Source: Vitrella brassicaformis CCMP3155 (Eukaryota; Protista; Chromerida). From it: a DNA stretch of 64,000 nucleotides. The translations under genes were made by a program, and so were the position numbers. Within the stretch, counting starts at the first letter, position 1. The number at the start of each line of letters is the position of its first letter. The stretch spans positions 248,001-312,000 of the forward strand of contig CDMY01000385.1 of assembly GCA_001179505.1 (NCBI GenBank), read 5' to 3'. Shown here piece after piece: positions 40,435 to 63,032 of this stretch. The notes under the pieces are model-generated. The model searched no databases. It saw only the letters and a list, made by a program, of their open reading frames with translations, and was not told where the DNA came from.

Positions 40435-43016
40435 ATGGGGCGGTGGCTGAATGTGGACATCATTGTCAACGATTTGCTGTACGTCTGCAAAGCATGCCTA
40501 ATCATCACGGGTGTGTGCGTCGGCGGGCTGTTCTTCATAACAATAGGATGGATAATATGGCCGGTCAGTCAGCACGCACACAGTTGTCACATCAATCAGG
40601 GACGCCAGAGCCCTCAACACGACTCTTCTGTAGCTCTGTGGACTCTGTGTTGTCATTTCCAGGTGATTTATGTCGTGTCTGAGGCTCTCTGCTACTGGAG
40701 ATGGCGATACCGACTGGCGCTGCTCAAGTCCCTCCCCCCCTACCGGCCGCCCGTCAGCCAGGAGTGGATCGAGATGTGCGAGACGGCCATGCTGGAGGAC
40801 CACACGGCCGAGGAGCTGCGGATGCTGCTGTATTATTGCTTCTACTGTGTCTGGCCGGAGCAGATCGGCCGGAGGGACGTGGAGAGCTTCTTCATGTACC
40901 ACTTCCCCACGTCATGGGAGCACATTGAGTGGTTTGTGGACCAGCTTGAGGACAAAATGGGTCAGTTAGCGCGGCAGAGGGGAGAACAAGGGCTCGCAGA
41001 GCCGACAAAGGATGGATGAGCAGTGAATGGATACATACGTGTGGGTGTGGGCGATTGCTGCCATGTCATTCATCGGTTTGCAGGCATCCGTTTCCCTCAT
41101 GTTCGAAGCACGACGATTCCGTCGCAGTGTCCGCGGACGGGCGACCCCATGCTGTTGCAGGACGCCTATTCGCGCATCCACGGGTACCGATTCGGTATCC
41201 ACCCCATCAAGGCCATCTACCGGCCCCTGCCGTTCCTCATAGCCATCAACCTGTGGCAGAGCTTCAGCCTATGGATACTCAAACGATACGGATTCAAGAC
41301 ATACGAGTAAGTAAGCAACGGACGGAGGGAGGGAGGGAGGGAGGGAGGGGGCAAACAGGGCGGGCACTCGGTGGGATGGATGGATGGATGTCTTGGTTTT
41401 GGCCGGTGTGGTTGGTCTGCTGGGGCTTCTTGTGCAGAGTGCCGACGAATCAGTTTGTGCGTTTCCACATGTGGATGCCGCCGAAGCACTTCGACGTCCG
41501 GCGCGACCGAGAGCGCAGTGTGCCAATCGTCGTCCTGCACGGCCTCGGTTTCGGCCTCATCAACTATGTCTTCCCCACACTCAAGCTCATGCAGCTGATG
41601 CGCACTCAGTCCCCACGGCCCCGGGGCTACGGCCGGCGATTCGCCCCGGCCCCCGTGTGTCCTCGGCCGGTGATCGTGTGCGAGATGAGCATGATCGGGG
41701 GTTATCCCAGCGGTGTGGCCGACTTCCGGCAGCTGCCGACAATGCCCCAGATCGCCCATTATGTGGCCCAGTTCGTCTACGCCCACTTCTCGCCGCCCAC
41801 CCCATTCGTCCCGGAAGAGGAGTCCGAGACCATCGGCGGGGGTGGTGCCCTGTCGATCTCCCTCCCCCATGGGCCATCACCTGGCTGGGAGGACGTCAAG
41901 TCCGCCCTCACAGGCACGGCATCGACGGCCATCGGCACGGACTCTCCGTCGCCTCTGTCGTCGGTGGTGTCGCCCCACACGGATGCCGAGGGGGAGTTGC
42001 AGAAGCGGGGGACGTTCTTCAGCGCTCACAGTGGCACGCTGACGACTCAGAACACTCTGGACGAGGACAGCCCGACACTGCGGCGGCGTGAGGAGGTGGA
42101 GAGGCAGAGGGAGAAGAAGCGTCGGGCTGAGGAGGCCCGGTCGCTGTTCGGGTGCGGCTATCGCAGGAAGCGCCAGGTGGACAAGGAGGAGGAACACGTG
42201 GCCACGCTCCGCTTCGTCCCCGACCACCGGAGAAAGGGCGTACACATGGATGTCGTCTCACACAGGTGAGGTGCACTCGGGTAGTGAGTGGGAAAAGGGC
42301 TCGCTCGCTTTGCTTGCTCATCTTATCTTGCTCGTCGCGCTTCTCTCTCTCTCTCTCTCTCTCTGTGGGGGGGGGGGGGGGNNNNNNNNNNNNNNNNNNN
42401 NNNNNNNNNNNNNNNNNNNNNNNNNNNNNNNNNNNNNNNNNNNNNNNNNNNNNNNNNNNNNNNNNNNNNNNNNNNNNNNNNNNNNNNNNNNNNNNNNNNN
42501 NNNNNNNNNNNNNNNNNNNNNNNNNNNNNNNNNNNNNNNNNNNNNNNNNNNNNNNNNNNNNNNNNNNNNNNNNNNNNNNNNNNNNNNNNNNNNNNNNNNN
42601 NNNNNNNNNNNNNNNNNNNNNNNNNNNNNNNNNNNNNNNNNNNNNNNNNNNNNNNNNNNNNNNNNNNNNNNNNNNNNNNNNGGGGGGGGGGGGGGGTCTG
42701 TCTTATATTTATCAGTTTCGGCACGGCGATAACGTCGATACTGCAAAAGCAGTACCCGTCGTTGATTCGGCGGTGTGTGCTGGTCGACCCCGTATGTTTT
42801 TTCGTGCTGCCCTTGAAGAAGGCGCAGCTGGGGTACCTCTACCCCTGGGAGATCAACCTGGTGGACCCACCTCACGGGAGGGGCAAGGGGCTCTTCGCCC
42901 TCATCAGGAGACCCCTCGAGAAACTTTATGACTTCAGGTCTGTCACTCAGGAGACGGCAGGCATTCAAATATCTGTCTGTGGGGGATGCATCGCCGGAAG
43001 AAAACCATGGATGGTG

Positions 43017-55791: not shown

Positions 55792-56396
55792 GCCAAACGG
55801 CAATCAAATGACAGGGTCGAGTGGTCCCGAACGGCGTGCCGAAGGGCAAAAGAGTTGCGGAGAGTCCCCTTTTGGTCCCTGGCGAGCAGCAACGCAGGCG
55901 GCCACAACGATGACGAAGATGCAATTGGTCCAGGTTCGTCAAGGCTGTGTCGTCCGAGGAGTACTTGCCCTCCACACCTCCTCCCTCCCTTCCCTCTCTG
56001 CAAGCTTAGCTGCAGACGGAATCAAGCGCGCAACTGCGGCGAATGGTTGCTTGGCACCCTGGGCTGGCGCCAGCCGTCGGCGAATGAATGCTGTCACTGT
56101 TCCCGTGCTGCTTTCGAGAAAACGGCTTAGCCTCTCTTGACGAGGGGGAAATTCAGGTGCCAACAAACAAACAAACAAACACAGCTTGAAGGTGCAGCCA
56201 GTCACAGGGAGGTGGATGGGATGGCTGTGTGTGTCGTCTGCCTGTTTGTGTGTGTGACACACAGATATCTGAGGGAGGCGAGGTCCGCGAGGGCAAAACA
56301 GTCTTCAGAGGCCGACCTTCTCAGCGGCAACAACAAGATCGTCAGAGGCCACGTTCGCTCTTCTCCGGCCTCGCTCCCCCCGTGCCATTTCTCCTG

Positions 56397-59300
56397 ATGG
56401 GCAACGGAGGCAGCGCAACCGCCCAGCCATCTCGGGCCCCCTCAGTGGCGCCAAACCAGGACGAGCCAGAGGAGATGTCGTCAGCGCCCACCCAAGTGGA
56501 CCCTCAGATCAACGTCAGCGGCCGCCTCTCCTTCGCGCAGAAGGGCCTCCCGCACTATGGCGTGGTCGTCATTGTGCTTCGTTCATCTCCCGACAGCAGG
56601 CGCCCTGACCCTGTTCGCGTCAAGCTGCAGCAGAGTTTCCTGCAGATCTTGAAGGACAACCGGCGGCTGACGTGCCGGCTGGTCAAGCCACGGGGCGGGT
56701 ACCAGTCGGCAGGCCTGCTGGTGGTGGCGGTTGGGGCCGTCGAGGACGCACTGCCCCCAATGGCGGAGGAGCAGGAGGTGGTCAAGCAGACGCTCACGGG
56801 CAAGTGGACCACCTTCAAGAAACACCTTATGCCGCTCCTCAAGAACGGGTGGGTGAGAGGGGGAAGGCGGCGCTGCAGACACAGTGACGGGAGCGTGGAG
56901 GCCTGTCTGTCTGTCTGTTTTGCCTGCTCAGTGACGATCTGCCGAGGCTGTTCACCCCTGCTGAGACCGTCGAGCTGGTCCGCCGTGAGCTCTACGCCAT
57001 GAGATACTCACACGATGCGCCGTATCAGAGCTTCGCCGTAGGCAAATACCGCGCACCACCGACTGTTGCATTACCCCGATGTATCGGTTATTTATCCTTC
57101 AGGGTTTGCGTGTGATGGACGTGTGTCACCAAGCGGGCGCCATAGAGGCGGACGACGTGTTCCCTGTCCACCGCCGGGAGATCCTCGCGGACGTGGCCGC
57201 TAACTGGAGGATAGCCAGACAACCACTCAAGAAAGTGGTGAGAGCCAAACTCACTGACACTGACACAGACAGATGCATGTCCGCTGGATCGATGTGTGGA
57301 TGGATCGACAGGTGCACTACTTCGGTTTCCCGATGGGTTACTACTTCGCCTTCCTCAACGTCTACAGCAACTGGCTCATCTACCCAGCCGCTCTAGGCAT
57401 CATATTCTTCCTGGCTGATCTCATCATGCCGCACCTCATGCCCTGGGCTGTCGGCCCCGAAAAGCAGACGCCCACCGGGCCCATCTTCGCCATCATCATG
57501 GCCCTCTGGAGCTCAGTGTTTGTCGAAAGCTGGAAGCGACAGGTGCGGTGCGATGCCATGCGGCTGCGGCAGCACCCATTTGACATCGCACTGAGTGAGC
57601 CCTCTGTCTGTCTTGTGCCTATGTGGTGCAGATCAACACGTACAGGTTCCGGTGGGGCGCTTGGCGGGGCTTCTGGCACTCGAGGGAGAAGTCGGGGTCG
57701 GCAGACTGGCCCGCACACTTCAGACTGCTCAGGTTGGTCTGACTAACTGACACGACAGAACCAAGCACAGGGGTGATGCACCTCACTCATTCCTGGTCTC
57801 ATCTTCCTTCTCGGCCTCACATCACACACTCAGGGACATGCGGATCCACCCCGCCGAGGACCGTGAGCTGCTGAACCACCCCAAGTTCCATTTCCTGTTC
57901 CAGGTGCGGGAGCAGACCGAGAGGGCCCAGGCAGCTATCACAGGCATCGCGCGGAGCATGACGGGCACCACGGAGCTGTTCAGCCACCAGCGGCAGAGAC
58001 GTCGCACATCTGGGAGCCGCATTCACCTCACTGCAGCTGCCGAAGGGGTCTACTGGAAGTGAGTGGGGATGGGATGGGATGGCTGGAGGGGAAGGGAGAG
58101 CACCTCACCTCACCTGGCTGACTTGGTTGATTCGTTGGTGCGTTTAGGCACTTGGGCATCTTGCTGGCCGTCCTCCTGATCATGGCGTCCACGGGCTTCA
58201 CCGTATTCTGCTTGCTGGAGCTGCAGGAATGGGTCAAGTAAGTCGTGACAGACAAAGAAAGAACGACACACCGACGGACTCTGATGTGAGTGACATGACA
58301 TCCACTGTGTACGTCTTGTGTTGTCGTGGTCACGTCACAGCAAGAAGACCTCCAACGGTCTGTTGACCCTCTTCCCGACTGTGCTCTATGTCATGCTGGC
58401 CATCGTCCTGCAGGTCAGCCAGCTCACAACACGAACCCACACACACCATCTGCAGCCTTTCCCCCCTGCTCTGCTTGTGTGCCTTGTGTTGTGTGCCCTC
58501 AGAGCTTCTACACTCAAGCTGCCTCATTCCTGACCAGCCTGGAGGGCCACCGCACGATCTCTCAGTACCAGTCTTCGTTCGTGGTCAAGAACGCCCTGTT
58601 TCAACTGCTCAACTTCCTGGGCTACTACATCTACCTGGCCTTCGCCGCCAAGAACCTCAAAGAACTCTCCACACAACTATACGTCTTCTTCATCGTCAAA
58701 CAGGTCGGTCAACCAGCCGACCAAAGCCACCCAGGCGAGGCGTGCCACACGCACACACAAGTTGTGTGCGTCGTGCCTGCAGGTGTTTTTGAATCTGATG
58801 GAGCTGGTGCGGCCGTCGGTGCAGTCGATGCTGCGCAGTGAGGCGACCTCCCCCGCCCTCGACCTCAATAACCCTCGGCGCGAGCCCCTCTATGGCCGCA
58901 TTATGAAGGAGGCATCACTCGCGCCATCCAACGAGTCCGACGAGTACCTGGAGCTGGCGGTGCAGTTCGGCGTAACGGCCATGTTCTCAGCGGTGTTCCC
59001 CCTAGCCCCTCTGTTTGGCCTCGTCAACAACCTGCAGGAGATCAGAAGCGACTCATTCAAGGTGGGCTGGGGTGGGTGGGTGGGTGGAGGGCAGCCAAGG
59101 GGATGTATGGGCGTGGCCTCACTAGTGTCTTCGCTGCACTGCTCTGCATGGCCGGTGTGGTGTGTGCTGTGCTGTGCTGCAGGCTTGTCGGTTGAGTCGG
59201 CGTCCATTCCCGTCGAGTGAGAGTGTCTATCAGAGCTGGGTGGCCGTCTACGAGGGGCTTTCCATTGTCGGCGTCGTCTCCAACTGCGCACTGCTCGGTC

Positions 59301-62247
59301 GGCACACGCACACACACACAGACACACACGGCTTGGCTTGCTTGGCCGTGTCGCGCTCACTCTACCTATCCTGTCATGGATATGTCTGTGTGTGCAGGCA
59401 TCCTGCAGGGCTGGTCGTTCGGCACCATCCTGATAATCGAGCACCTGCTGCTGTTCTTCAAGGCATACCTCGCATGGTCAATCCCCGACGTGCCCGAAGA
59501 GGTTCAGCAGGGCATGATCGAAAGCGACCTTCTGTCTACCCAGCTGGCAGCCGGCAGCCGGGCCCCATCCCTCCGCACCCCCTCCCCACACACATCCTCC
59601 CCCCTCCCCCAGGTGCCCGAGCAGCCATCCCCCGCCGCCCTGCGCTTCCCCCCCTCTCGCTCGGTCCGCCCCAGCCTGGCAGTGTGCTCTTCGTTGGGCG
59701 AGCTAGACACTGTCGACGACATGGCCCTTGAGACGCCATTCTCTGAAGAGGACTTCGAGCCCTATGAGATATTCGAGAGGGAGTGCTACAGCTTCGGCAT
59801 GGCGGGCAGGGCCGCCGAGGGGGCCGCGGGGGCGGCGGCGCTCTCTGGGAGGGTGCTCATCGACTATGAGGCGATCTTCATGTTGGAGGGGTCGTGGAGG
59901 CTGCTGCGGGATGTGTCGGACAGCATGGAGCCCATCATGGCTTTCTTCGGGGTCCCCTGGGTCAAGCGAATGGTGAGTGAGTGGCCCCACCAAACACACA
60001 CACACACGTGTGACAAAGCGTCTGTCTGGTGTTGTGTTCTTATCCTGAAGGCGATGCATCGCGCGACGCCCACTTGCATCATTACCCTCGGCATTGAGAG
60101 CGACGCCCCCTCGGGCTCTCTCATGCCAGACATCGCGTCACTGCACGTCGTCGCGAAACTGCCTCTCGGGATCACAAAGGTGCGTCAAGACGCGCACAGA
60201 CCCTGAAAACTGTCACGATACTCATCGATCACGTCTATGTCACCCACCAGACGAATGAGGTCCCTCTGGACGGCAGGGAGACGGAGCACTTTGACGAAGA
60301 CAGTGGTTTGTGGAAGACCACCGCATGGATCGATCGCAACCGTATTGTCGTCAAACGGGTCCATCAGACGAGGGAGGCCACCCTCGTCGAAACCAGACAA
60401 GTGAGTCAGTCAAGGGAGGGAAACACACCGCATCGATGCAGTCACAGACGTCTCGATGGATGTCTTCCTCTCTGTCTGCAGTTGTTCGACCCGTCTTCTC
60501 GGCGAGGCTCGCTTGGCTGGCCCGCTGGCAATGAGATGGTGCTGCGGTACCAGTTCCACCTGACGAGCAGCTCCCCCCAGCTCGTCGACCTCACCATCAA
60601 CCGCTACTTCGTGCAGGAGGCCCCCTCCGCCATCGACCGGTCCGCACTCCTCAGGCGGTTGCCGTCCAACTACAGCGACTCCGGCAGGCTGTCGCTCTAC
60701 CGTGATGTGGCGTCGTCCATCAAGCCCTCCCAGCTGCTCTACGGCACACCCGCGTCGGCCATGCCCGACAGCATCAGGTCGGTGGGCGTGCGTGAGCCGG
60801 TGGAGATGATGGACGAGGAGGAGCCCAAGCCGTCGGCCGAGGAGCTGGAAGAGATGGAGCGGTACACCATCGAGGGCAGGAAGGCCTGTGAGGCCCTATA
60901 TGACATGGCGAGGTCCGACGGCTGGAAGGAGGCCGGCAGGAAGGACGGCGCAAAGGTGAGAGAGAGAGAGAGAGAGGGGAGCAGAAGAGCATCCATTCCA
61001 TTCCATCACCGCCCATCCCACCGATATATGTGATGTCATTCATGTGTGTCAGCTGTACCGGAAAGACATCCCCAACATGCCGATGATGGGTCGGGGAACG
61101 ATAGAGTTCCAGGAGGAGATACCGGTGCAGACGGTGTTCGACTACATATGGGACCCAGACACCAAACCCGAGTACGATCCCATGCTCGACGCGGGCTTCA
61201 GCCTGCACGTCTACCCAAACGAACTGGGAATCATGTACCAGGTCAGTCAGTGAGTGAGATACATACAAGGGGAGATAGATAGGCAGGCAGGCAGGCCATC
61301 CAACCAACAATCGCCTTGTATGTGTTGCGGTGACTGACAACTGGGGTTGCGTCTTGCAGGCCTTCCGTGGTCAGTATGGTGTGCCGGGTCGCGACTTCAT
61401 TGTCATGGCCTGGAAGGAATCGGTGCGCCGCACTCACGGGCATACAGAGCGCACGACAATGGTCGCCCTCTGTGCGTTTGTGCTTGGCCATTGCAGTTTG
61501 GCGAGGATCACATGATTCTGGGCTTCAAGTCGATCGACTGGCCGGATGACGACCGCATGTCAAAGAAACACGTCAGGGGCAAATGCATCGTAAGCCATCA
61601 CCCACACCCACACACACTCCCCCCCCCACACACACAGACACACACATAGACAGGGCAGCTGGTAGCTAGCGAGGGGACTAACCGTACGCTTAACGCAAGT
61701 GGTGACCCGGGAGGTTGACTGGTCTCCTCCCCCAGTAGCTGCGCATTTCGTGGAGCGGCACACACGCCCTCGCCATACCGATGAATGCTCTCAGAGAGTT
61801 AGTCTCGTTCTTCAATGGTCTCTGTTGGGCTGCGTGTCGGGCGAGGGCCCTCAGGGCCTCTCCTCGCCTCGCCGTCGATGAGACCGTGGGGAGGAGATGA
61901 CATTGTTTTTGATACACTGCATATGAACACACGCTCTTTGCATGATGATCGGTATTATGGCTTCCTTGATAGCTGTTTCTTTGTTGCTGTGTTGGTGTGT
62001 GCCCTTATGTGTGCAGCTTGGTGGCTTCGAGGTGCGTCGTCTCGAGAACGGTCATGTGGAGCTCTCATACTTCAACCAGGTAGGTCAGCCACATAACTAA
62101 CGTCGCTTTGGGACCACTTGTGTGTGTGTGGCGTGTCAGGCTGATCTGTGCGGCAACATCTCCGAGTGGCTGGTGACGCAGGCCAAGCTGGATCAGCTCA
62201 AGATCGTGACCAATGTCAAGAGGCAGCTCATAAAGAAGACGGCATGA
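56397..62247 (+). CDS. Anoctamin/TMEM16 fused to an FABP/lipocalin-like domain and a START domain; N-myristoylation-type start MGNGGS
   Basis: TMEM16 motifs: HYFGFPMGYYFAFL, WSSVFVESWKR, DEYLELAVQFG...FSAVFPLAPLFGLVNNLQEIRSD.FK, IEHLLLFFKAYLAWSIPDVP. FABP-like: LEGSWRLLRDVSDSMEPIMAFFGVPWVKRM...ETR. START: WKEAGRKDG, VFDYIWDPDTKPEYDPM, RDFIV, HVRG, ADLCGNISEWLV. Confidence 0.9.
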
Positions 62248-63032
62248 GACAAACGCAGGCAGGCCAGCCATAGACAGAGACAGGCAAGACAGGGCAAGGC
62301 AGTGCAAGGCAAGGCAAGACAAGACCAGTAGGGTAGGCTAGGTAATTGCAGGTCAATCGATATGGGATCATTGGCACTTCTCCCGTCCCATTGTGCTCTT
62401 CGCTCGCATGGAGGCAACGGCCCCGTGTGTCCATCCGTCCGTCCCTTCGTCGGTCGGTCGGTCGGTCTGTCTGTCTGACTATCTGTCTGAGTCAGTTATG
62501 GTGGCTTTGTTGGCCTTAATTGCTCGTGTGTGGTCCTGTCCTCTGAAGTGTCTGTCTGTCTGTCTGTGTTGGGAGGAGGGGCTGGCAGCTCAGCTGGCTC
62601 TGACGTGACTTTGTGTGTGTTTGGACTTGTGGGATCTCATCCTGTGTCCTCTTCACCTTGATCACATCGCCTCCTGTGTGAAGGCTGCCCCTCGCTGGCC
62701 TCGTTTCATGGTCAGCTGTTCTGGCAAGTTCTGTCTCGTTTGTTGCTGTCCAAGAGCATTGAGACAGCCGGATGGACGAAAGCCGTGACTGCGTCACGCA
62801 CACACCGCAACACACACACGCATCCACCCACCCACCCGCCACGCAAAGGCACGGCACAGCACGGCACAGCGCGGCCTGCCTGCCTGCCTCAATGTGCGAT
62901 AGACTCACTCAGCTGCGATCGTCCGTCCAACCAACCAATCGACCAAGGCACAGTGATGAGCAATCGACACACCGACCACCGACCAAATGACACAAAACGC
63001 ACCACACCGACAGACCTACTGGCTAGTCTAGT

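What the first reader, a model, noticed from the sequence alone, without database searches (positions are those of the whole stretch)
56397..62247. Anoctamin-FABP-like-START triple fusion: a one-polypeptide lipid scrambling and transfer machine
Seen: a complete TMEM16 membrane domain (~57100-59500) continues in frame into a fatty-acid-binding-protein/lipocalin-like beta-barrel (~59875-60570; GSW..., FGVPWVKR, PLDG, ETR) and then a START domain (~60900-62247). The MGxxxS start suggests myristoylation. Established: TMEM16 proteins are scramblases or channels, some act at membrane contact sites (yeast Ist2 recruits the lipid-transfer protein Osh6), and START and FABP domains shuttle lipids. Inference: two soluble lipid carriers are covalently tethered to a scramblase. 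I do not know of this architecture being described.
Basis: partly seen in the sequence, partly recalled or inferred. Interest (0 to 1): 0.8.

Follow-up and report, generated by a model that had tools for sequence, protein, structure and literature searches.

The report
Scramblase fused to lipid-carrier domains
One gene of the alga Vitrella brassicaformis makes a single protein that joins a TMEM16-type membrane lipid scramblase, by long flexible linkers, to a START lipid-carrier domain and probably a second, fatty-acid-binding-protein-like carrier; yeast builds a comparable partnership (Ist2 and Osh6) from separate proteins, and no paper searched here describes the joined form.

Summary
The architecture is real. 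Spliced RNA contigs from three studies define a 20-exon gene (56397-62247, + strand, 1283 aa). All 19 introns are GT..AG and fit the contig lengths exactly. One exon (59398-59972) runs from the last TMEM16 helix into the next domain, so this is one reading frame, not two genes.

- **TMEM16:** Pfam Anoctamin E 3.8e-88. The five acidic Ca2+-site residues are conserved. The closest solved relative is the ER scramblase TMEM16K.
- **START:** above Pfam's curated cut-off, best PDB hits are STARD10, STARD4 and STARD6, and 30 of 30 atlas clusters are START.
- **FABP-like domain:** probable only. There is no Pfam hit, the best PDB E is 0.028, only its first ~45 residues carry the signal, and the AlphaFold model is poor.

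The protein is already public (CEM08639.1 / A0A0G4F7I4, auto-annotated Anoctamin + START). No paper describing it was found. An exhaustive search of 1.84 billion proteins, using part of the C-terminal region as query, found no relative.

The most likely function is an ER-anchored scramblase with tethered lipid carriers, a one-chain version of Ist2-Osh6. That is inferred, not shown. I class it as a new variant of a known kind, of moderate to high interest.

The parts
56397..62247 (+). Whole coding region: 20 exons, 1283 aa. Exons: 56397-56848, 56932-57037, 57103-57237, 57312-57542, 57632-57732, 57834-58058, 58148-58237, 58341-58413, 58503-58703, 58783-59061, 59183-59297, 59398-59972, 60051-60179, 60251-60400, 60482-60955, 61053-61241, 61360-61422, 61497-61589, 62017-62079, 62140-62247.
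   Evidence: GT..AG joints in spliced contigs; clean translation; contig-length arithmetic; identical to P0001:68-1350.
56088..56396 (+). Public model's extra N-terminal 67 codons (exon 56088-56156, intron 56157-56264, then 56265-56396). Probably 5' UTR.
   Evidence: Located. GC3 is 0.58 against 0.815 for the CDS, below every 67-codon CDS window (minimum 0.687). The transcript's 5' end was not observed.
56397..56417 (+). MGNGGSA: candidate N-myristoylation motif if translation starts here.
   Evidence: Sequence. The match to the G-x-x-x-S consensus rests on my own knowledge. The start codon is favoured by composition.
56397..57237 (+). N-terminal cytosolic region (aa 1-231), no named family.
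   Evidence: No Pfam or NCBIfam hit. Its end aligns with the pre-TM1 region of TMEM16K.
57315..59516 (+). TMEM16/anoctamin membrane domain (aa 233-709; exons 4-12).
   Evidence: PF04547 E 3.8e-88. Best solved relative is TMEM16K/ANO10, 5oc9, E 1.6e-45.
58792..59052 (+). Ca2+-site motifs in exon 10: N-L-M-E-L (TM6, 58792-58806), E-Y-L-E-L (TM7, 58942-58956), N-N-L-Q-E-I-R-S-D (TM8, 59026-59052).
   Evidence: Aligned residue for residue with EYMEM and NNIVEIRLD of mouse TMEM16A and with TMEM16F, and with TMEM16K.
59517..59873 (+). Linker 1: ~120 aa, rich in S, A, P and E, net charge -10, inside exon 12.
   Evidence: Composition; coding-level GC3 0.83. Exon 12 is covered without a break by X6 record 12 and X7 record 14.
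59874..60628 (+). FABP-like beta-rich domain (aa ~829-1003; end of exon 12, exons 13-14, start of exon 15).
   Evidence: PDB phmmer: 10 of the 15 top hits are FABPs, best E 0.028, colinear. Atlas features point to FABP/Lipocalin_7 clusters and Oplophorus luciferase. Foldseek: 50 of 50 top hits are iLBP family members, at weak E. Against: no Pfam hit, pLDDT 44, split test.
60629..60889 (+). Linker 2: ~85 aa, rich in S, E and R, inside exon 15.
   Evidence: Composition; GC3 0.92.
60890..62244 (+). START domain (aa ~1091-1283; exons 15-20).
   Evidence: PF01852 above the gathering score. PDB hits STARD10 at E 0.0011, then STARD4 and STARD6. Atlas: 30 of 30 clusters are START, score 0.96.
62233..62244 (+). 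C-terminal -KKTA, which matches the KKXX di-lysine ER-retrieval consensus.
   Evidence: Sequence. The motif reading rests on my own knowledge and is untested.

Best explanation
This is a single Vitrella brassicaformis gene. It encodes a Ca2+-activated, TMEM16K-like lipid scramblase, most likely resident in the ER. Its cytosolic C-terminus carries two soluble lipid-binding modules on long disordered tethers. The first is a ~175-aa beta-rich domain that is probably FABP-like. The second is a START domain. Proposed mechanism: the tethered carriers take lipids from, or deliver them to, the cytosolic leaflet of the host membrane, and they can reach an apposed membrane at a contact site. The scramblase in the same chain re-balances the two leaflets, so transfer is not limited by depletion or overfilling of one leaflet. 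This would be a covalent, one-chain version of the yeast Ist2-Osh6 partnership. Shown here: one transcript and one reading frame, TMEM16 and START family membership, a conserved Ca2+ site, and soluble C-terminal domains on ~120-aa and ~85-aa linkers. Inferred: scrambling rather than channel activity, ER residence, the FABP fold, the lipid ligands, and functional coupling.
For: - **One transcript:** spliced contigs with 19 GT..AG introns come from three studies. X7 record 14 and X6 record 12 run from before the ATG into START exon 18. X2 record 10 runs from exon 13 to the 3' UTR. Exon 12 alone joins the last TMEM16 helix to the next domain.
- **TMEM16:** PF04547 E 3.8e-88. The TM7 and TM8 Ca2+ residues align with TMEM16A and TMEM16F. 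The closest solved relative is the ER scramblase TMEM16K, E 1.6e-45, against ~1e-27 for TMEM16F and TMEM16A.
- **START:**
- **FABP-like:**
- **Solubility and tethers:** there is no hydrophobic segment after aa 698, and the linkers are 123 and 85 aa. PMC12617493 reports that tethers must exceed ~40-60 residues for an ER-anchored transfer module to reach the other membrane, and that Ist2 scrambling sustains Osh6 transfer.
- **Coding signal:** all segments, linkers included, have coding-level GC3 of 0.78-0.92.
- **ER residence:** the C-terminal -KKTA fits an ER-retrieval signal (my own knowledge).
Against: - There are no functional data of any kind.
- The FABP assignment is not significant by any single test. 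Its C-terminal half finds no FABP, and the AF2 model's N-terminal register disagrees with the sequence alignment.
- The AF2 model of START was unusable, pLDDT 33.
- No ortholog with this architecture was found, so there is no conservation evidence that the fusion is under selection.
- TMEM16 proteins can be channels, scramblases or both, and sequence alone does not decide which.
- ER residence is inferred only from similarity to TMEM16K and a four-residue motif.
Confidence: 0.5

Rival explanations
1. Lipid-sensor model. The START and FABP-like domains do not carry lipids between membranes. They bind a ligand such as a sterol, fatty acid or phospholipid and so regulate gating of the TMEM16 domain in the same chain. 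START domains appear to act in this regulatory way in acyl-CoA thioesterases and plant HD-ZIP factors (my own knowledge).
For: The architecture is equally compatible with this model. ACOT11's START domain is among the PDB hits. Covalent attachment guarantees a 1:1 ratio, which suits regulation.
Against: Linkers of ~120 and ~85 disordered residues are long for an allosteric regulator and typical of tethers that span contact sites. Two different lipid-binding modules in series are easier to explain as carriers.
Confidence: 0.22
2. Anchor-only model. The TMEM16 domain serves mainly as a polytopic membrane anchor and tether that holds the START module at an organelle surface, as the MENTAL domain does for STARD3 or a transmembrane helix does for LAM/Aster proteins. 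There is no mechanistic coupling to scrambling, and scrambling may even be lost.
For: Membrane-anchored START and StART-like proteins are well known (my own knowledge; Ysp2 is cited). No coupling has been shown here.
Against: The Ca2+-binding acidic residues of TM6 to TM8 are all retained, and the full Anoctamin profile is matched. That argues for an active TMEM16 rather than a degenerate anchor.
Confidence: 0.15
3. The middle domain is not FABP-like. It is some other beta-rich fold of unrelated function, so the protein is a TMEM16-START fusion with an unknown spacer domain. This rival bears only on the FABP sub-claim and is compatible with the best explanation and with the other rivals, so its confidence is not additive with theirs.
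For: No Pfam or NCBIfam hit. The best E is only 0.028, and unrelated IRF3 hits score in the same range. The C-terminal half finds no FABP. The geometry-only search gives ferredoxin-like folds and porins at the same Z. pLDDT is 44.
Against: Ten of the 15 top PDB sequence hits are FABPs from different subfamilies, aligned colinearly from the G-x-W motif. All 50 top Foldseek hits are iLBP family members. FABPs give the best coverage with VIA-align, ~110 of ~131-138 residues. The only named atlas clusters are FABP/Lipocalin_7 and a FABP-fold luciferase.
Confidence: 0.38
4. Artefact: two or three neighbouring genes joined by mis-assembly, read-through transcription or a wrong gene model.
For: Only assembled contigs were available, not raw long reads. 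The protein is a singleton.
Against: The junction between TMEM16 and the next domain lies inside one exon with no stop. The spliced contigs of two studies are identical over 3.7 kb. DNA runs hold the locus at 98-100% of sampled words. Codon bias is uniform across all segments. The break at 59595 is a low-complexity repeat with no splice donor.
Confidence: 0.03

Closest known systems
Yeast Ist2 with Osh6/Osh7 (TMEM16 scramblase and tether plus a soluble ORP lipid-transfer protein)
   Same: An ER TMEM16 scramblase whose long disordered cytosolic C-terminal region positions a lipid carrier. Scrambling sustains transfer, and tether length matters (PMC12617493, PMC8282664).
   Different: In yeast the carrier is a separate protein, bound non-covalently at micromolar affinity, and belongs to the ORP family. 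Here the carriers are START and FABP-like domains and are part of the same chain. No Ist2-type polybasic plasma-membrane-binding end is evident. The chain instead ends in -KKTA.
Human TMEM16K / anoctamin-10 (PDB 5oc9)
   Same: Best solved sequence relative of the membrane domain (E 1.6e-45), including the pre-TM1 region and the Ca2+-site motifs. It is a Ca2+-activated ER scramblase (my own knowledge).
   Different: TMEM16K has 660-odd residues and no C-terminal lipid-binding domain.
STARD3/MLN64 and LAM/Aster (GRAMD1, Ysp2): membrane-anchored START or StART-like proteins
   Same: A membrane anchor followed by a cytosolic START-type module that works at contact sites. A minimum tether length is required.
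   Different: Their anchors are the 4-TM MENTAL domain or a single helix, neither with known scramblase activity. Here the anchor is a complete TMEM16 domain.
Bridge-type transfer protein and scramblase pairs (VPS13-XK, ATG2-ATG9, Toxoplasma VPS13A-DAT1)
   Same: The same logic of pairing bulk lipid delivery with leaflet equilibration, also seen in alveolates (bioRxiv 10.64898/2026.01.02.697355).
   Different: Those are separate proteins, and the transfer proteins are bridges rather than shuttles.
Animal intracellular lipid-binding proteins (FABP, CRABP, CRBP)
   Same: The N-terminal G-x-W strand and the 'FGVPWVKRMAM' segment align with strand A and the helix-turn-helix of FABP5 and Sm14. The size is similar once insertions are allowed for.
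   Different: No Pfam match, ~175 aa instead of ~132, and the C-terminal half is unrecognisable by sequence. The family is held to be animal-specific (PMC13747185), so membership would itself be unusual.

Membership tests
TMEM16 / anoctamin (PF04547) | Full-length match to the Anoctamin profile above the curated cut-off | tested here: met
   296.8 bits against a cut-off of 28, profile positions 3-457 of 460, residues 300-776 of P0001.
TMEM16 / anoctamin (PF04547) | Conserved acidic Ca2+-binding residues on TM6, TM7 and TM8 | tested here: met
   E-Y-L-E and N-N-x-x-E-I-R-x-D align with TMEM16A and TMEM16F. N-L-M-E on TM6 aligns with TMEM16K.
TMEM16 / anoctamin (PF04547) | Ten membrane helices with both termini in the cytosol | tested here: inconclusive
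   A simple hydropathy scan resolves only some of the helices. The topology is inferred from the full-length alignment to TMEM16K.
TMEM16 / anoctamin (PF04547) | Ca2+-dependent lipid scrambling or ion conduction | not testable with these tools
   Needs reconstitution, for example a dithionite assay.
START (PF01852) | Profile match above the curated cut-off | tested here: met
   26.3 bits on the whole protein and 30.9 bits on the domain alone, against a cut-off of 22. Only profile positions 70-184 of 207 are matched.
START (PF01852) | Similarity to solved START domains along the whole domain | tested here: met
   STARD10 E 0.0011. STARD4 E 0.013 over query residues 18-187 against chain residues 27-193. 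STARD6 E 0.1. Atlas: 30 of 30 clusters are START, score 0.96.
START (PF01852) | Helix-grip fold with a lipid cavity | tested here: inconclusive
   The single-sequence AF2 model had pLDDT 33 and was not usable.
Intracellular lipid-binding proteins (FABP; PF00061 / PF14651) | Profile match to Lipocalin or Lipocalin_7 | tested here: not met
   No Pfam family at E up to 1 for residues 885-1080. No NCBIfam hit.
Intracellular lipid-binding proteins (FABP; PF00061 / PF14651) | Significant sequence similarity to known FABPs | tested here: inconclusive
   Best E 0.028. Ten of the 15 top hits are FABPs, aligned colinearly. The N-terminal half alone scores E ~0.4 and the C-terminal half finds none.
Intracellular lipid-binding proteins (FABP; PF00061 / PF14651) | Ten-stranded barrel capped by a helix-turn-helix after strand A | tested here: inconclusive
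   The AF2 model (pLDDT 44) shows strand, two helices, then ten strands. Foldseek: 50 of 50 top hits are iLBPs at E >= 3e-3. VIA-align gives Z 5.5-6.3 over ~110 residues, no better than unrelated folds. The model's register conflicts with the sequence alignment.
Intracellular lipid-binding proteins (FABP; PF00061 / PF14651) | Carboxylate-binding Arg...Arg-x-Tyr residues in the last strands | not tested
   No reliable alignment of the C-terminal strands. 'INRYFVQEA' resembles the FABP C-terminus by eye only.
Ist2-type ER-plasma membrane tether | C-terminal polybasic PI(4,5)P2-binding motif and an Osh6-binding motif in a disordered tail | tested here: not met
   The tail carries folded domains instead. 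Both linkers are acidic, with net charges of -10 and -4. It therefore works like this family but is not a member.

The most novel reading that the evidence does not exclude
This is a natural one-chain scramblase and lipid-shuttle machine. A Ca2+-gated TMEM16 scramblase is mechanistically coupled to two tethered carriers of different specificity, an FABP-type barrel for fatty acids or lysolipids and a START domain for glycerolipids or sterols. It would work at an ER contact site of an alveolate alga. It would then be a 'Rosetta-stone' fusion showing that coupling between scramblases and shuttle-type transfer proteins is a general principle. It would also be the first FABP-family domain outside animals.
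Probability: 0.3. Interest if true: 0.8.

Novelty: new variant of a known kind. Interest (0 to 1): 0.55.

Why it matters
Cell biology has recently found that lipid-transfer proteins work together with scramblases: Ist2-Osh6, VPS13-XK, ATG2-ATG9, and Toxoplasma VPS13A-DAT1. In every known case the partners are separate proteins. For shuttle-type carriers there is only one worked example, Ist2-Osh6 in yeast.

A natural covalent fusion of a TMEM16 scramblase with START-type carriers would be independent evolutionary evidence that the two activities belong together. It would also be a compact system for reconstituting coupled scrambling and transfer with a fixed 1:1 ratio. The tether lengths are built in and can be varied.

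If the middle domain proves to be a true FABP-family barrel, that would challenge the view that the family is confined to animals.

The limits are that the gene is known from one species only and that nothing about its function has been measured.

Tried and rejected
- **Word search with exons 14-15**: no hit at 171-544 aa, so no fragment-sized copies exist.
- **Word search with the middle domain alone**: no hit, so no alignment could be built for folding.
- **Word search with residues 300-1350**: only four TMEM16 hits, none but the protein itself carrying START. Sensitivity is low, so this is weak evidence of absence.
- **Exhaustive phmmer**: only the protein itself and a repeat-protein false positive (P0002). 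The query covered just the C-terminal half of the middle domain, linker 2 and the first START helix.
- **Other long anoctamins**: the second long Vitrella anoctamin P0005 and the Phytophthora hit P0003 have no similar C-terminal domains.
- **Single-sequence AlphaFold:** the middle domain gave pLDDT 44 and START gave 33. The START model was discarded.
- **Structure searches with the middle-domain model:** VIA-align over the whole PDB gave nothing distinctive. The ESM Atlas structure search gave unnamed bacterial clusters at TM < 0.5.
- **Atlas feature search of the whole C-terminal half**: no usable hit.
- **Split-domain PDB queries**: these weakened the FABP call.
- **Contig break at 59595:** rejected as an alternative isoform. 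It is low-complexity sequence, has no GT donor, and the partner sequence is absent from the window.
- **Rfam scan of the locus, including the 427-nt intron**: no hit.
- **Literature searches** for a TMEM16-START or scramblase-LTP fusion: none described.
- **Not done:** This was solved by finding P0001.
- **Not done:** the transcript's 5' end was not seen, because the single read-laying run began at 56350.

Full report
**What is there**

The region 56397-62247 has no single open reading frame. It is a multi-exon eukaryotic gene in ~59% GC DNA. Translation of the three forward frames showed protein-like stretches separated by short ACAC-rich gaps.

Public runs that hold the stretch were found, and the contigs of four of them were laid on 56350-62349. 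Fifteen GT..AG joints were seen directly. Four more introns were hidden where repeats were masked. I placed them from GT..AG sites. They account exactly for the unexplained lengths in the contigs: 99, 116, 30 and 219 nt, plus a 377-nt tail shared by two contigs.

The result is a 20-exon, 3852-nt CDS with only its terminal stop, encoding 1283 aa.

**One transcript**

- X7 record 14 (3925 nt) and X6 record 12 (3397 nt) come from different studies. Both run from upstream of the ATG through the membrane domain and the middle domain to the end of START exon 18.
- X2 record 10 comes from a third study. It overlaps them from exon 13 and continues into the 3' UTR.
- Exon 12 (59398-59972) contains the last TMEM16 helix (Pfam profile positions 426-457), the whole first linker and the start of the next domain. 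The junction is therefore not an inference from splicing.
- A contig break at 59595, seen in all runs, lies in a C/T-rich and CA-rich tract with no splice donor. Its partner sequence is absent from the window. It is an unrelated repeat-sharing contig.
- These are assembled contigs, not single molecules. Long-read cDNA remains the formal proof.

**Identity**

An exhaustive phmmer search of 1.84 billion representative proteins, with exons 14-15 as query, returned one real hit, P0001. Residues 68-1350 of P0001 are identical to my model.

P0001 is CEM08639.1 / UniProt A0A0G4F7I4 from V. brassicaformis CCMP3155. It is a singleton cluster, named 'START domain-containing protein' by UniRef, with precomputed Pfam PF04547 + PF01852. 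The fusion is therefore already in public databases as an automatic prediction.

**The domains**

*TMEM16*
- Pfam Anoctamin E 3.8e-88 over profile positions 3-457 of 460.
- The TM7 and TM8 Ca2+ ligands (E-Y-L-E and N-N-x-x-E-I-R-x-D) align residue for residue with mouse TMEM16A and TMEM16F. The TM6 N-x-x-E is present.
- The closest solved structure is human TMEM16K/ANO10 (E 1.6e-45), against ~1e-27 for TMEM16F and TMEM16A and ~1e-20 to 1e-23 for the fungal scramblases.
- That TMEM16K is an ER scramblase is my own knowledge.

*START*
- PF01852 scores 26.3 bits on the whole protein and 30.9 bits on the domain, against a cut-off of 22.
- The top PDB hits are STARD10 (E 0.0011), STARD4 (nearly full length) and STARD6.
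- All 30 nearest atlas clusters are START, scoring 0.96.
- A single-sequence AlphaFold model was useless, with pLDDT 33.

*Middle domain (P0001 ~896-1070)*

This part of the claim is weakest. Evidence in favour:
- Ten of the 15 best PDB sequence hits are FABPs of different subfamilies (FABP5, Sm14). They align colinearly from the G-S-W motif through 'FGVPWVKRMAM' and 'DGRETE'. The best E is 0.028.
- The only named clusters near it in the protein atlas are FABP/Lipocalin_7 and the Oplophorus luciferase subunit, which has a FABP-type fold (my own knowledge).
- All 50 top Foldseek hits of the model are FABP, CRABP, CRBP, BABP or SAHS.
- The geometric aligner aligns ~110 of ~131-138 FABP residues, the best coverage in its list.

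Evidence against:
- There is no Pfam or NCBIfam hit.
- The model has pLDDT 44.
- A geometry-only search of the PDB gives unrelated folds at the same Z.
- The model's N-terminal register disagrees with the sequence alignment.
- When the domain is split, the N-terminal half finds FABPs only at E ~0.4, below a chance IRF3 match. The C-terminal half finds none.

I put the FABP-like fold at about 60%.

*Linkers and solubility*
- There are no hydrophobic segments after residue 698.
- Linker 1 has 123 aa, is rich in S, A, P and E, and has net charge -10. Linker 2 has 85 aa.
- All segments, linkers included, show coding-level third-position GC of 0.78-0.92. This argues against mis-joined or foreign pieces.

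**The start codon**

The public model adds 67 residues from an upstream exon (ATG at 56088). Those 67 codons have GC3 of 0.58. The CDS has 0.815, and no 67-codon window of the CDS falls below 0.687. They look like 5' UTR.

That favours ATG 56397 and an MGNGGS N-terminus. This fits the myristoylation consensus (my own knowledge) and is topologically sensible, because the N-terminus of TMEM16 proteins is cytosolic. I could not see the 5' end of the transcript, so the question stays open.

**How it probably works**

TMEM16 C-termini are cytosolic, so both soluble domains hang in the cytosol on tethers of ~120 and ~85 residues. The Ist2-Osh6 study provides three relevant points (PMC12617493):
- an ER TMEM16 scramblase recruits a shuttle-type carrier through its disordered tail;
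- the carrier must sit more than ~40-60 residues from the membrane to reach the partner membrane (~0.38 nm per residue);
- scrambling sustains transfer.

The Vitrella protein has the same elements in one chain. The conserved Ca2+ site argues that the TMEM16 part is active and not a mere anchor. Similarity to TMEM16K and the C-terminal -KKTA (KKXX type, my own knowledge) point to the ER.

I therefore favour an ER-anchored scramblase with tethered carriers acting at a contact site (confidence ~0.5). The main rivals are a lipid-sensor model, in which the domains gate the scramblase (~0.22), and an anchor-only model (~0.15). The partner membrane and the ligands are unknown.

**Novelty**

No paper describing a TMEM16 protein fused to a lipid-transfer domain was found. 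The 2018 anoctamin superfamily survey only remarks that some large members may be fusions with extra hydrophilic domains.

No relative with the architecture turned up. These searches were limited in sensitivity or in the part of the protein used, and a proper Pfam-architecture census was not possible with the tools here.

Membrane-anchored START proteins and scramblase-carrier partnerships are both known kinds. The covalent combination is a new variant.

Noticed in passing
window 56088-56396: The public gene model (CEM08639.1) starts at ATG 56088. Its 67 extra codons have non-coding-like GC3 (0.58 against 0.815), so the annotated N-terminus is probably wrong and the true start is ATG 56397.
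   Followed up: partly
window 62233-62244: The protein ends in -KKTA, a match to the KKXX di-lysine ER-retrieval consensus, on what should be a cytosolic C-terminus.
   Followed up: no
window 59973-60050 and 60401-60481: Two introns inside the FABP-like domain are multiples of three (78 and 81 nt) and free of in-frame stops. Retaining them would give in-frame insertions of 26 and 27 residues.
   Followed up: partly
window 61590-62016: Intron 18 is 427 nt, while the other 18 introns are 60-121 nt. A low-depth contig (X6 record 13) lies wholly inside it (61657-61965), suggesting some intron retention or pre-mRNA. It has no Rfam match.
   Followed up: partly
window 56901-56920 (intron 1): A short GTCT/GT-rich element has about ten-fold higher contig depth than its surroundings and many loose ends in all four runs. 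It is probably a dispersed simple repeat shared by many transcripts.
   Followed up: no
window 59860-59925 (aa ~781-797, linker 1): An acidic-aromatic patch, ETPFSEEDFEPYEIFERE, sits in the otherwise S/P-rich linker. It could be a short binding motif of the FFAT kind, but it does not fit the FFAT core well by eye.
   Followed up: no
P0005 (another Vitrella brassicaformis protein, 1608 aa): This is a second long Vitrella anoctamin. It has ~840 residues before the membrane domain and a ~300-residue P/S/K-rich tail, with no lipid-binding domain detected.
   Followed up: partly
window 42382-42681: A 300-base run of N marks an assembly gap.
   Followed up: no
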